DNA of 63,252 bases, filler included, from Octopus bimaculoides (GCF_001194135.2; 4 parts of 3 records of this genome joined end to end with filler, not necessarily neighbours in it), one strand, 5' to 3'. Positions 59,293-63,252 are shown, counted from the whole stretch's first letter. The notes: generated by a model from the sequence alone, not told the origin. A program made the numbers and translations.

Positions 59293-61798
59293 NNNNNNNN
59301 NNNNNNNNNNNNNNNNNNNNNNNNNNNNNNNNNNNNGTATATATATACTGATAAGATCATTATTTAAAATACCGATCATGTCAAGTGACCGGCATAGGAA
59401 TAAAAAAAAACCCTTATAGGTATTAATTATTATTAAAATTAGAACGATTATATTAAGTACATTGTTTTATGTGCTACAACAAGTTAGGTGCCAAGACGAT
59501 AACGGACAATCTGAAAGATTTAACCGCAATTTCGAGCAAGTCGAGGAATACCTTAAATCCTCCACTGTTGGTTATTTTCATGTAAAACATCACAAATTAG
59601 TATATTGTGGCGTCTATTTACGTTCTGAATTCAGTCTTATTCAAACTCGAATTTGCCTTTCGTTATTCTGGATTCGATAAAAGAATACAGCCAGATATAC
59701 AGCAAGCACAATAATAAGGCTCATTTCAAGCCGAGAAGGTCATCGTCACGTTAAACCTTCATTTGCCGCATACAGTCTGTCACGAATCTCCTCATGAAGG
59801 ATGTGAGCAATTGATGCCTAAGAGAGACCACGGACAGGCAGCTTGATTGTTTGTAGGATGTACTGAGCGAGGTTCAGTACACCAATTTGTGAATATATTA
59901 ATTCATTCTTTTTCTGATTAGTTTTGATATTTCTGAAAATATTTGACAAAAACCAAAGGACAAAGTGTTACAGTTTGTCAATATAGGGCAAACGTTAATG
60001 CAATGAGCTGGCAGAGTCGTTTCTGTGCTAGAAAAAAAATTCCATAACGTCATTACTTTACGTTCTGAGTTCAATTGCTCCGCAGGTTATTTTTTTTCAA
60101 TTTTCAACTTTACATATATTATGTAATTTTGTTACTACTATCAATCAATCGACTGTGGTCATACTGGGACTCTTATCTCAAGGTTATAGTTGATTACATT
60201 AACCCTAGTATTTATATTTTTCTTATCATCAGACACTTATTTTTTGGCGTGAGTTAAAATAAAAATCAAAGTGGAACTGTGAGGACTTGAACTCAGAATC
60301 TAGCGGGAGGCACAATCAAATAACACAAAGTATTCTACTAACGCCTTACCGATTCCGAAAATCAACCGTATGATTTTCTTATGTAATAAGATTATATTCG
60401 TATATACTTCTTTTATCCCATTTGGGATTATTTATACTTTAGCTGTGTCAAGAAAAGCGATATAACGTTAATATTTCGTTTAGCTGAACTAAATAGGGTT
60501 TTTAATTTCAACTCCAAGTGACTTTATACCCACGGGACGATCATACTGAATTTCAACCTTTTCAATAATCACTTAAAATAATGATTTCAGCAAGCACGCT
60601 TGTTGAACTCAGCTTTCAGTACAAGTAAGCCGATAAGAAACTATTTTCAACTGTTCATAGATTGTCTAGATTTTTGCAGATGAATTCCACAGGAAATACA
60701 CCTACTCTTCTCTATAGATATTTAAACGAATGCAATGTAGTGTTAAGCGACCTGTCGAGAGACACAATGATAGCATTGTACAGGATATAAACTAAACAAC
60801 CCATGATATTGTACTTAGAGAGATATATATCACTTCGAAATATCCAAATACTGTTTTATATATATTTTTTTTATATTAAATTATACGTACATATTTCTTA
60901 AGCAATTAATCATTTCCAATCCGCTTCCATTCGATGTATTAGATTTTCTCTCGGTCTAAAAAATTATAAATAAAAGAACAGCGAAAAAAATAATAAGAGA
61001 AAATACTTTCATATTAAATATATATATATTAAGTAAGTTGTTATAATAGTCTGCACTAGAAAATTAATATGAATTCTTAGCAAGCACAACTGTTCACATT
61101 TGTCTCTTCCCTGGTGTGTGAAATAAAAGCTGAAAATAATAGTAAGTACTGAGAATAATAAGAAAAAATATATGCGAAACAGAAGAAAAAAATAACGGCA
61201 TTATATATATATTTTTTATATAAAATCTGCTGAGCGTTGAAGAATATGATTAACAATTTTTTCGCTGGCAACAATGTACACACAAAAGCATACACATACA
61301 AGGCACACACAGGCAAGCAAGCACACAGAATATCCTACCATATATGTTCGTAAAGGTTATACACACACACACACGCACACACACACACACACCCACACAC
61401 ACACATATATATATATACACGTCGATTACGAGACATATATGAGAAGCGGTATGGGAGAAATTTCAATAACTCATCGAAATAACATACGCACGCGCTGACA
61501 CACAACACAGAAACCAACATGTGTTCTAAAGATATTCTTCATTTACTGGTCTCAATCATGAGGTCATATTAGGACATATCTATCGAGGTGTTTTTAGTAG
61601 ATTATATAAACCCAACTAATTTGTAATTGGTTTCTGCATTGTGAGATGCAGAATTCTGAATGAACATTGACATATGAAGGATACAATGCAGTCGTTATTG
61701 AAAGGCAGATCTATTCGAATGAACCTCTTCTAATATCATGGTGATATTAACAAATATAAACACACGGACATACACCTCCATTTTAACCGTGTGCGCAT

Positions 61799-61839
<41 letters not shown>

Positions 61840-61983
61840 TATCCACCCTGTGGTAAATAGAAAAATAAAGTGTCTGGCTCAAGAACACAACACGCAGCCC
61901 GGTCCGGGATTTGAACTCACCATCTCATGATCGTAAGCTCGACGCTCTAACTACTGAGCCATGCGCCTTCACACACACACACA

Positions 61984-62023
<40 letters not shown>

Positions 62024-62428
62024 CACACACACATATATATCGTGAAGTACATTTGCCACCTAAATGTGGCTGACCTGTATTGGACGATGCTACTGTAGCT
62101 TATAGCCCCAGAAAGATATCTCCTCCAGCTGGCTAACGACACACTGTCTGTGCACGATCAATATTTACGAAGGGAAATCATCGTTCCCATCTCTAACCTT
62201 ACGGGCCCGGTTTTCCTGAGTTGTAACGTCTTCAGCGTGTGACAATCACCAGCTAGGAATGGGAAGTGATTCCAATCTCAAGTACTATATGCTTTTTCCA
62301 GTGAAAACCATCTCGCACAAATTATTATTGCTTGTTTCTCCTTTTTCGAGATCAGCGGTGGTTTCTCATTGGAAAAATCATATAGTATTTTGCGTTTGGA
62401 ATCACTTCTCACCCCTAGCCGGTGAATG

Positions 62429-62475
62429 TCACACGCTGATGACGGGTTACTACCCAGAAACCTGGGTCCCTGTGA
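62429..62475 (+). ncRNA. type I hammerhead ribozyme fold (HHR-1 of tandem pair)
   Basis: Stem I TCACACG/CCTGTGA (6 of 7 pairs), CTGATGA plus C, stem II GGGT-TACT-ACCC plus A, GAAA, self-complementary stem III ACCUGGGU, GTC site (62466-62468). Confidence 0.8.
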
Positions 62476-62672
62476 ATCACGTAATGCTAGAGATGGGAAC
62501 AATGATTTCCATTCGCAAATACCGATCGTGCACAGACATAATACTACTGTTGGTTAGACCTAGGAAGCTGCACCGCTTCCTGTCGGCCTTAACATATTTC
62601 CTGAATGCATTTCACTAGAATTATATGTTTACAAGGGTTTGACGGACATCTTCGACTAGCAGCTCATACTAC

Positions 62673-62715
62673 TCCAGACTGATGACGAGCAAAGACTGAG
62701 AAACATGTCTCTGGA
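62673..62715 (+). ncRNA. type I hammerhead ribozyme fold (HHR-2 of tandem pair; weak stem II)
   Basis: Stem I TCCAGA/TCTGGA (6 bp), CTGATGA plus C, irregular stem II, A plus GAAA, palindromic ACATGT stem III, GTC site (62707-62709). Confidence 0.65.
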
Positions 62716-63252
62716 TGCAGGCTTAGCTGGGTGGAGGTGCTTCTCTCCCCTTTGTGAATATAAGGACACAGGAAATGTGTTAAGGCCGACAGGAAGCGGT
62801 TCAGCTTCCTAGGTCTAACCAACAGTAGTATTATTCCCTTTCAGGGGACTCACATTAAGTTGACAGCATACAACTACTTCATCGTATCACTGCTGCATAA
62901 ATCTCTCTGAGAGATTTAGAAATGTATTATTTCTAAATGTTTGTATATGTTTGTGTGTCTGTGTTTGTCCCGCCAACATCGCTTGACAACCGATGCTGGT
63001 GTGTTTACGACGCTTCACCTAGCGGTTCGGCAAGAGAAACCGATAGAATAAGTACTAAGCTTACAAAGAATAACTCCTGGGGTCGATTTGCTGGAGTAAA
63101 GTCGGTGCTCCAGCACGGCCGCAGTCAAATGGCTGAAACAAATAAAAGAAAATGAAACAGAATAAAAAAATATATATAGACCGATATAGATATATATGTA
63201 TATATGTATGTATATATATATATATGTATCTATATATATATATATATATATA

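What the first reader, a model, noticed from the sequence alone, without database searches (positions are those of the whole stretch)
62429..62833. Tandem same-strand hammerheads 241 nt apart: a retrozyme-like or circular RNA unit
Seen: HHR-1 (site after 62468) and HHR-2 (site after 62709) share the unusual CUGAUGA-C...A-GAAA core. They are followed by loosely similar downstream sequence (ccattcgcaaata...gtgcacag vs ccctttgtgaata...ggacacag). HHR-2 sits in the loop of a 65-bp near-perfect inverted repeat that abuts IR1 with no spacer. Established: animal non-LTR retrozymes are tandem units of a few hundred nt delimited by type I HHRs that yield circular RNAs, and short palindromic stem III favours double-hammerhead folding. 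Inference: cleavage would release a 241-nt RNA (62469-62709) that could circularise. I am not aware of this family being described.
Basis: partly seen in the sequence, partly recalled or inferred. Interest (0 to 1): 0.9.

Follow-up and report, generated by a model that had tools for sequence, protein, structure and literature searches.

The report
Decayed hammerhead-like motifs inside two foldback repeats
Two hammerhead-ribozyme-like motifs really are there, but they sit in two unrelated, abutting inverted-repeat elements, and one has lost a helix, so they look like relics of retroelement hammerheads rather than a unit that releases a 241-nt circular RNA.

Summary
The sequence observation holds. 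Two same-strand CUGAUGA-C…A-GAAA cores have predicted cut sites after 62468 and 62709. A 66-nt, 97% inverted repeat surrounds the second core and abuts another inverted repeat at 62538. Such motifs are far rarer in shuffles (3.5e-4 and 3e-3 per piece).

The retrozyme or circular-RNA reading fails every in-silico test I could run:
- The flanks of the two motifs are not significantly similar, so there is no tandem unit.
- HHR-2 has only 2 bp of helix II.
- The two helix III sequences cannot pair with each other (-2.8 kcal/mol, against -11.2 and -6.0 for self-pairing).
- The 241-nt interval folds no better than shuffles (z = -0.64).
- No Rfam hammerhead model reports either motif, even when only 70 nt is searched.
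- HHR-1 lies in the right arm of a 394-nt foldback whose left arm carries a decayed mirror copy on the minus strand.

Best reading (about 0.45): these are relics of minimal type I hammerheads of the Penelope-like-element/retrozyme kind, in 5'-truncated, inverted and abutting retroelement fragments that are probably inactive here. The main rival is foldback or MITE DNA elements with fortuitous cores. No genomic copies could be retrieved, so family membership is untested. Interest is low to moderate.

The parts
62429..62475 (+). HHR-1, a type I hammerhead-like motif. Layout: helix I 62429-62435/62469-62475 (6/7 pairs, C.C at 1.2-2.2); CUGAUGA 62436-62442; unpaired C 62443; helix II 62444-62447/62452-62455 (4 bp, loop UACU); unpaired A 62456; GAAA 62457-62460; helix III ACCUGGGU 62460-62467; C17 62468. 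Predicted cut between 62468 and 62469.
   Evidence: Read directly from the sequence. Found by the descriptor, with 3.5e-4 expected per shuffle. No Rfam hammerhead hit. The hammerhead fold is -5.4 kcal/mol against an MFE of -15.2 kcal/mol.
62672..62716 (+). HHR-2, a degenerate hammerhead-like motif. Layout: helix I 62672-62678/62710-62716 (6/7); CUGAUGA 62679-62685; 62686-62699 where helix II should be (only 2 bp); GAAA 62700-62703; palindromic ACAUGU 62703-62708; C17 62709.
   Evidence: 3.2e-3 expected per shuffle; no Rfham hammerhead hit; only a weak C/D-box-like hit of 15.5 bits.
62203..62241 (-). Decayed mirror copy of HHR-1 in the left arm of foldback 1. The core is CUGAAGA-C...AG-GAAA at 62235-62212. 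It lacks two helix II G's, has C instead of U16.1, and has about 10 nt deleted where the 3' strand of helix I should be.
   Evidence: its fold is no better than shuffles, z = +1.36.
62145..62538 (.). Foldback 1 (FB1), 394 nt. Arms are about 62145-62340 and 62341-62538: 85-88% complementary in the blocks 62145-62203/62480-62538 and 62227-62281/62390-62444, and 73% overall with gaps. The most divergent stretch is the hammerhead region.
   Evidence: I2, I3, I24; E = 7e-63.
62538..62834 (.). Foldback 2 (FB2), 297 nt. It has 66-nt arms, 97% complementary (62538-62603/62769-62834), and a 165-nt interior that is only weakly self-complementary, with HHR-2 near the centre. A TA dinucleotide sits just inside each end, which may be a target-site duplication.
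   Evidence: I1; MFE -165.5 kcal/mol; interior about 55-60% identity with many gaps.
62469..62709 (+). It spans the end of FB1 and the left half of FB2, and it is neither a repeat unit nor self-paired.
   Evidence: z = -0.64; 48 of 200 shuffles fold as well.

Best explanation
The locus is a stack of two old, non-coding repeat fragments in repeat-rich animal DNA. Each fragment carries the remnant of a minimal type I hammerhead of the kind found in the terminal repeats of Penelope-like elements (PLEs) and in their non-autonomous derivatives, the non-LTR retrozymes.

FB1 is a head-to-head pair of 5'-truncated copies of one element. The + copy keeps an almost intact hammerhead (HHR-1), with its cut site 70 nt from the outer, 3' end of the arm. 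The inverted copy has lost its hammerhead.

FB2 is a second, unrelated fragment that abuts FB1. It consists of a 66-nt inverted copy of its own 3' end followed by about 230 nt that contain a hammerhead without helix II (HHR-2), with the cut site 125 nt from the 3' end.

Shown: the motifs, their statistics, the foldback anatomy and the absence of a tandem unit. Inferred: the retroelement origin, the insertion mechanism (target-primed reverse transcription with inverted and tandem copies, and PLE endonuclease re-targeting of PLE ends), and the claim that at this locus neither motif cleaves efficiently. The reasons for that last claim are that HHR-1 would need a second identical copy to build helix III, that it is trapped in a long hairpin, and that HHR-2 is dead. 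Read-through transcripts would instead form two long double-stranded hairpins.
For: The motifs are far above chance.

Both motifs show hallmarks listed for PLE min-HHRs in PMC4209133: an extra nucleotide between A9 and 10.1 (C 62443 and C 62686), a short palindromic helix III (ACAUGU; ACCUGGGU, which self-pairs over 8 bp with two G.U pairs at -11.2 kcal/mol), and no detectable loop-loop contacts. HHR-1 also has a G-C pair at the base of helix II.

The same paper reports dual min-HHRs 100-700 bp apart on opposite strands, and mostly dispersed single motifs from truncated PLEs. FB1 has exactly that layout: cores at 62436 (+) and 62235 (-).

PLE insertions typically include an inverted 5'-truncated copy, partial tandems and a bias for microsatellites (PMC8557442). 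Here (CA)n/(TA)n lies about 100 nt to the left.

In the Anolis PLE, reverse transcription starts roughly 90 nt downstream of the hammerhead cut site, with an optional 30-40 nt tail, and the PLE endonuclease recognises PLE tail sequence (PMC11167929). That fits cut-site-to-end distances of 70 and 125 nt and two elements abutting without a spacer.

Mismatches in the arms show no G.U excess on the + strand. The hairpins are therefore DNA-level duplications, not selected RNA rods.

Retrozyme monomers that cannot transpose are common (bioRxiv 10.64898/2026.07.22.740005).
Against: There is no RT or GIY-YIG remnant anywhere in the 3.9-kb piece, and no other copy of either element in it.

Rfam hammerhead models do not score the motifs.

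Both motifs have an unpaired A between helix II and G12, equivalent to a C.A pair at 10.1-11.1. This is not part of the published min-HHR consensus and lies next to catalytic residues.

FB2's arms are 97% identical outside but only about 55-60% inside, which looks more like terminal inverted repeats than two copies of one template.

The hammerhead region is the most divergent part of FB1, the opposite of what selection on the ribozyme would give.
Confidence: 0.45

Rival explanations
1. FB1 and FB2 are foldback or MITE-type DNA-transposon remnants (or in-situ palindromic duplications). In this reading the hammerhead-like cores are fortuitous, or at least were never ribozymes. The transcripts would matter only as long hairpins, substrates for RNA editing or small-RNA pathways.
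For: FB2 has 66-nt near-perfect terminal inverted repeats, a non-palindromic interior, a size of 297 nt and TA at both ends. Both elements fold as long hairpins, and Rfam only sees generic miRNA-precursor-like hairpins. No hammerhead model hits. HHR-2 lacks helix II. The C.A next to the core is non-canonical. There is no coding remnant of a retroelement. G.U counts are neutral.
Against: Two independent motifs with a core, 6/7 helix I pairs, U16.1-H17 and a palindromic helix III within 241 nt on one strand are very unlikely by chance: 3.5e-4 for the first, times roughly 2e-4 for a second one within 300 nt. The two cores also share non-core bases (p about 0.01). FB1 has no target-site duplication. 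The TA of FB2 is itself part of the palindrome, so it is not diagnostic.
Confidence: 0.25
2. HHR-1 and HHR-2 are both active, possibly as a double hammerhead, and excise a 241-nt RNA (62469-62709) that is ligated into a circle. This would be a non-LTR retrozyme dimer.
For: The two motifs are on the same strand. The 241-nt spacing lies inside the 150-450-nt range of metazoan retrozymes (PMC7229834). Both have a short palindromic helix III and share the C...A flanks.
Against: The units are not repeats. HHR-2 has 2 bp of helix II. Heterodimeric helix III is -2.8 kcal/mol with unequal strand lengths. The interval is not self-paired. Both motifs are sequestered in long hairpins. There is no Rfam hit, whereas retrozyme hammerheads are described as canonical type I.
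Confidence: 0.05
3. The whole 690 nt (62145-62834) is a permuted DNA copy of a rod-like circular RNA, a large retrozyme-like or viroid-like element. Two hairpins that abut without a spacer are what a rod-shaped circle looks like when it is opened in the middle of one strand. HHR-1 and its mirror copy would be the plus- and minus-polarity ribozymes facing each other in the rod.
For: There is zero spacer between the foldbacks. The 690-nt fold is essentially one nicked rod (z = -29). Hammerhead cores of both polarities lie opposite each other in FB1.
Against: There is no G.U bias for either polarity. A 66-bp perfect duplex is unlike natural RNA rods. The minus-polarity motif is dead, and HHR-2 sits at a hairpin tip with no helix II. 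There is no terminal redundancy or tandem copy. The two halves have very different arm identities, which implies different ages.
Confidence: 0.07

Closest known systems
Minimal type I hammerheads (min-HHRs) of Penelope-like elements and their dispersed truncated copies (Cervera & de la Pena 2014, PMC4209133; Craig et al. 2021, PMC8557442)
   Same: Type I topology with an open helix I. An unpaired nucleotide after A9. A very short palindromic helix III that needs a second copy to form. No loop-loop contacts. The motifs are mostly dispersed in non-coding DNA. Pairs occur on opposite strands 100-700 bp apart. Inverted 5'-truncated copies and abutting insertions are typical, and insertions lie near microsatellites.
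   Different: No PLE ORF or pLTR can be shown here. There is an additional unpaired A before G12 (or a C.A pair at 10.1-11.1). HHR-2 has no helix II. No family consensus or covariation is available.
Metazoan non-LTR retrozymes (Cervera & de la Pena 2020, PMC7229834; Li, Clavereau & Pollet 2026 preprint)
   Same: Same-strand type I hammerhead-like motifs a few hundred nt apart in AT-rich animal DNA. Monomeric 'dead' derivatives are known.
   Different: Retrozymes are tandem arrays of near-identical monomers with canonical hammerheads and highly self-paired monomer RNAs. Here the two units are unrelated, the motifs are not canonical, and the interval is not self-paired.
Newt/salamander satellite 2 hammerheads that cleave as double hammerheads
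   Same: A weak helix III with a palindromic loop, and predicted dependence on dimer formation.
   Different: Those dimers form between identical neighbouring repeats. HHR-1 and HHR-2 have incompatible helix III strands.
Foldback elements / MITEs
   Same: Short, non-coding elements with long terminal inverted repeats that fold as long hairpins. FB2 may have a TA target-site duplication.
   Different: MITEs are not known to carry hammerhead cores. FB1 has no detectable target-site duplication.

Membership tests
Hammerhead ribozyme, type I | Conserved core C3-U4-G5-A6-N7-G8-A9 ... G12-A13-A14-A15.1 ... U16.1-H17 | tested here: met
   Both motifs have CUGAUGA, GAAA and UC at the right places.
Hammerhead ribozyme, type I | Helix I closing the motif around the cleavage site | tested here: met
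   6 of 7 pairs in each motif.
Hammerhead ribozyme, type I | Helix II stacked directly on the core (10.1-11.1 pair, usually G-C) | tested here: inconclusive
   HHR-1 has a 4-bp helix, but it is separated from the core by an unpaired C and A (or a C.A pair). HHR-2 has only 2 bp and so fails.
Hammerhead ribozyme, type I | Recognised by curated covariance models (the Rfam hammerhead families) | tested here: not met
   No hammerhead family is listed at E<=10 on 3916, 721, 71 or 69 nt.
Hammerhead ribozyme, type I | Site-specific self-cleavage | not testable with these tools
   Needs in vitro transcription. Thermodynamics are unfavourable for the monomer (-5.4 against -15.2 kcal/mol).
PLE-type min-HHR | Unpaired nucleotide between A9 and 10.1 | tested here: met
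   C 62443 and C 62686. The feature is described in PMC4209133.
PLE-type min-HHR | Palindromic 15.2-16.2 / loop 3, active as a dimer | tested here: met
   ACAUGU is a perfect palindrome. ACCUGGGU self-pairs over 8 bp with two G.U pairs. Homodimer energies are -6.0 and -11.2 kcal/mol. The two motifs cannot pair with each other (-2.8).
PLE-type min-HHR | Located in the pLTR of an element encoding RT plus a GIY-YIG endonuclease | tested here: not met
   No Pfam hit in any of the six frames of the piece. The piece is only 3.9 kb, and truncated copies normally lack the ORF, so this does not exclude a PLE origin.
PLE-type min-HHR | Genome-wide family with compensatory changes in helices I and II | not testable with these tools
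   No animal genome collection is available. The metagenome 17-mer scan gave only chance hits, the viral scans gave none, and the ORF-based look-ups were empty.
Non-LTR retrozyme | Tandem, near-identical monomers of 150-450 bp, each with a hammerhead | tested here: not met
   No direct repeat except the 29-nt core. Flank similarity gives p = 0.09-0.31.
Non-LTR retrozyme | Monomer RNA highly self-paired | tested here: not met
   The 241-nt interval has z = -0.64, and 48 of 200 shuffles fold as well.
Non-LTR retrozyme | Circular RNA in vivo | not testable with these tools
   No transcriptome data are available.
MITE / foldback DNA transposon | Terminal inverted repeats | tested here: met
   FB2 has 66 nt at 97%. 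FB1's arms are 85-88% complementary in blocks.
MITE / foldback DNA transposon | Target-site duplication of fixed length | tested here: inconclusive
   FB2 could be TA-flanked, but TA is palindromic and lies inside the repeat. FB1 and the composite have none. The only flanking 8-mer repeat is at chance level.

The most novel reading that the evidence does not exclude
The two motifs represent an undescribed hammerhead variant with a conserved C.A (or two-sided bulge) between helix II and the core. It would be carried by a family of rod-forming elements, possibly a circular RNA of about 690 nt whose permuted DNA copy is the pair of abutting foldbacks. The variant would be active in dimeric or protein-assisted form.
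Probability: 0.08. Interest if true: 0.6.

Novelty: new member of a known kind. Interest (0 to 1): 0.27.

Why it matters
If the retroelement-relic reading is right, this is one more example of the thousands of dispersed minimal hammerheads that Penelope-like elements and retrozymes leave in invertebrate genomes. That is useful for repeat annotation but not surprising.

It would matter more if genomic copies showed that the C...A flanks of helix II are conserved and that the variant cleaves. That would extend the tolerated hammerhead core and add a lineage to the list of animals with ribozyme-bearing retroelements.

The practical lesson for the scan is that a hammerhead core plus helix I is not enough. 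Helix II, helix III compatibility between neighbours and true repetition of the unit all need checking before a circular RNA is inferred.

Tried and rejected
1. Rfam cmscan at E<=10 on four nested ranges gave no hammerhead family. The only hits were microsatellite or long-hairpin artefacts (mir-297, MIR869 and others) and a weak C/D-box-like hit on HHR-2, all far below gathering scores.

2. A tRNA scan found none.

3. I looked for family copies four ways. The metagenome scan with GTCACACGCTGAWGACG returned 120 loci, all chance 17-21-mers by BLAST. Two viral-contig scans were empty. The exact-protein look-ups of three ORFs found nothing. Two homology searches with ORFs over FB1 and over the SINE-like element also found nothing. 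The organism therefore could not be identified with tools.

4. A six-frame Pfam scan for RT or GIY-YIG remnants gave nothing (one search failed on stop codons).

5. I tested the flanks of HHR-1 and HHR-2 for homology, and the result was not significant.

6. I tested for RNA-level selection of the hairpins through G.U asymmetry and found none.

7. A search for target-site duplications found only a chance-level 8-mer.

8. I used the metagenome loci as a real-sequence background for the descriptor and rejected that control as biased, because every locus was selected for the helix I plus core 17-mer.

9. The energy of a full double hammerhead could not be evaluated with nested-structure energy rules, because it is pseudoknotted for two type I units. 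Helix III duplex energies were used instead.

Full report
WHAT IS THERE. The piece (59337-63252) is AT-rich and non-coding. It is full of (CA)n and (TA)n runs and of SINE-like sequence. No Pfam domain appears in any frame and there is no tRNA. Within it, the pattern CTGANGA-N6-30-GAAA occurs three times against 0.2 expected: at 62436 (+), at 62679 (+) and at 62235-62212 (-).

- HHR-1 (62429-62475) has 6/7 helix I pairs, a 4-bp helix II (GGGU/ACCC, loop UACU) and helix III ACCUGGGU. The predicted cut is after C62468.
- HHR-2 (62672-62716) has 6/7 helix I pairs and the palindrome ACAUGU as helix III, with the predicted cut after C62709. It has at most 2 bp where helix II should be.
- In both, a C follows A9 and an A precedes G12.

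In 20,000 dinucleotide shuffles of the piece, motifs as good as HHR-1 appear 3.5e-4 times per shuffle and motifs as good as HHR-2 appear 3.2e-3 times. The 66-nt, 97% inverted repeat around HHR-2, and its zero-spacer contact with the neighbouring inverted repeat at 62538, are also confirmed.

HHR-1 is not in unique sequence. It lies in the right arm of a 394-nt foldback, FB1 (62145-62538; self-BLAST E = 7e-63; blocks 85-88% complementary).

The left arm, read on the minus strand, is a mirror copy of the HHR-1 unit with the core CUGAAGA...GAAA. It has lost two helix II G's, U16.1 and the roughly 10 nt that form the 3' strand of helix I, and it does not fold. The hammerhead stretch is the most divergent part of FB1.

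FB2 (62538-62834) has near-perfect 66-nt ends, but its interior is only about 55-60% self-complementary, with many gaps. HHR-2 lies near the centre of that interior. The whole 690 nt folds as two long hairpins (z = -29).

TESTS OF THE RETROZYME / CIRCULAR-RNA READING.
1. Tandem unit. Apart from the 29-nt core (72% identity), the sequences around the two motifs are not significantly alike. Whole units give p = 0.085, the downstream parts p = 0.31 (local) and 0.19 (global), and the upstream parts p = 0.95. Self-BLAST finds no direct repeat.
2. Ribozyme quality. HHR-2 lacks helix II. No Rfam hammerhead model lists either motif at E<=10, even when only about 70 nt is searched. The monomeric hammerhead fold of HHR-1 is -5.4 kcal/mol, whereas a competing hairpin (ACCCAG/CUGGGU) gives -15.2.
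3. Double hammerhead. Each helix III can self-pair (HHR-1 -11.2, HHR-2 -6.0 kcal/mol). The HHR-1/HHR-2 heteroduplex is only -2.8 kcal/mol, and the strands differ in length (8 against 6 nt). The two neighbours therefore cannot activate each other.
4. Self-paired monomer. The 241-nt interval folds no better than shuffles (z = -0.64). Retrozyme circles, by contrast, are described as highly self-paired (PMC7229834; PMC7761336).
5. Sequestration. In a read-through transcript both motifs are buried in the long hairpins.

The specific model of a 241-nt excised circle is therefore not supported.

WHAT IT MOST LIKELY IS. The published description of minimal hammerheads in Penelope-like elements lists these features: an extra nucleotide between A9 and 10.1, a G10.1-C11.1 pair, a palindromic helix III that requires dimers, low activity in vitro, thousands of dispersed single motifs from truncated elements, and pairs 100-700 bp apart on opposite strands (PMC4209133).

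PLE insertions characteristically carry an inverted 5'-truncated copy next to the forward copy, form partial tandems and prefer microsatellites (PMC8557442). In the one PLE studied biochemically, reverse transcription starts roughly 90 nt downstream of the hammerhead cut site, with an optional 30-40-nt tail, and the endonuclease recognises PLE tail sequence (PMC11167929). Non-LTR retrozymes are now argued to be non-autonomous pLTR derivatives, with many immobile monomers (preprint 10.64898/2026.07.22.740005).

The locus fits this picture in several ways:
- The extra C after A9 and the palindromic helix III.
- Opposite-strand cores in FB1.
- Cut sites 70 and 125 nt from the outer ends of the arms.
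- Two elements abutting without a spacer.
- A (CA)n/(TA)n tract about 100 nt to the left.

Arm mismatches show no G.U excess on the + strand (FB1 4 against 9, FB2 4 against 1), so the hairpins look like DNA-level duplications that have drifted, not selected RNA rods. I therefore read the locus as relics of PLE/retrozyme-type hammerhead-bearing retroelement ends that are probably inactive here (confidence about 0.45).

WHAT WEAKENS THAT READING. No PLE coding remnant is present. No genomic copies could be obtained, so neither a consensus nor covariation exists. The unpaired A before G12 (equivalently a C.A pair at 10.1-11.1) is not part of the published consensus and sits beside catalytic residues; that judgement rests on my own knowledge of hammerhead structure. 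The sharp drop in FB2's arm identity, from 97% outside to about 55-60% inside, looks like the terminal inverted repeats of a MITE, with a possible TA duplication. The MITE/foldback rival is therefore kept at 0.25.

Against pure coincidence stands the joint rarity of two such motifs within 241 nt on one strand, together with the shared non-core bases (10 of 18, p about 0.01).

A more exotic reading is that the two abutting hairpins are a permuted copy of a rod-like circle of about 690 nt. The anatomy allows it, but the G.U test, the perfect 66-bp duplex, the dead minus-polarity motif and the lack of any tandem redundancy disfavour it.

ORGANISM. The organism could not be established with the tools. 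From memory, the element at 62938-63150 resembles the abundant octopus SINE. If the source is a cephalopod, Penelope elements and 235 Rfam Hammerhead_1 hits have been reported in the giant squid genome (PMC6962438), and remnant PLEs in Octopus (PMC8557442).

VERDICT. I classify it as a new member of a known kind, with interest about 0.27. The decisive step is a search of the source genome for copies of the two units, followed by cleavage assays of monomeric and dimeric HHR-1.

Noticed in passing
window 61862-61968 (minus strand): A tRNA-like stretch with box A-like TGGCTCAGTAGTTAGAGC and box B-like GAGTTCAAATCC, directly next to the (CA)n run at 61970-62035. It looks like the head of a tRNA-derived SINE. 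ARAGORN and Rfam call no tRNA.
   Followed up: partly
window 62938-63150 (+), followed by A-rich and (TA)n sequence to 63252: A SINE-like element (GT-rich start, '...GGTCGATTTGCTGGAGTAAAGTCGGTGCTCCAGCACGGCCGCAGTCAAATGGCTGAAAC', A-rich tail). From memory it resembles the very abundant octopus SINE. Its 72-aa ORF has no match in the protein collection.
   Followed up: partly
window 60256-60340 (minus strand): A second stretch with a box B-like GAGTTCAAGTCC, possibly another tRNA-derived SINE fragment.
   Followed up: no
window 62674-62710 (+): The HHR-2 core also reads as UGAUGA ... CUGA inside a terminal stem and gives a weak C/D-box snoRNA-like hit (SNORD44, 15.5 bits against a gathering score of 40). 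It is much too short for a snoRNA.
   Followed up: partly
window 62228-62443 and 62285-62385: The Rfam plant miRNA-precursor models (MIR869 at 59 bits against 330; MIR6146, MIR4208) match FB1 only because it is a long hairpin. The mir-297 hits at 61341-61410, 61781-61858 and 63171-63252 are microsatellites.
   Followed up: yes
window 62898-62918: A small 21-nt palindrome (ATTTAGAAATGTATTATTTCTAAAT region) between FB2 and the SINE-like element.
   Followed up: no
locus L097 (metagenome contig, chance hit of the 17-mer): The sequence GTCACACG-CTGAAGA-CGCCG...CGGTC-GAAA-...-TT|CGTGTGG passes my hammerhead descriptor (helix I at least 6/7, helix II at least 4 bp). It may be a genuine bacterial hammerhead or a selection artefact of the query.
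   Followed up: no
window 62060-62067 and 62933-62940: An identical 8-mer, CTAAATGT, lies on both sides of the foldback pair, about 85 nt and 99 nt outside it. It is at chance level (about 0.2 expected) but could be a target-site duplication of a larger composite insertion.
   Followed up: partly
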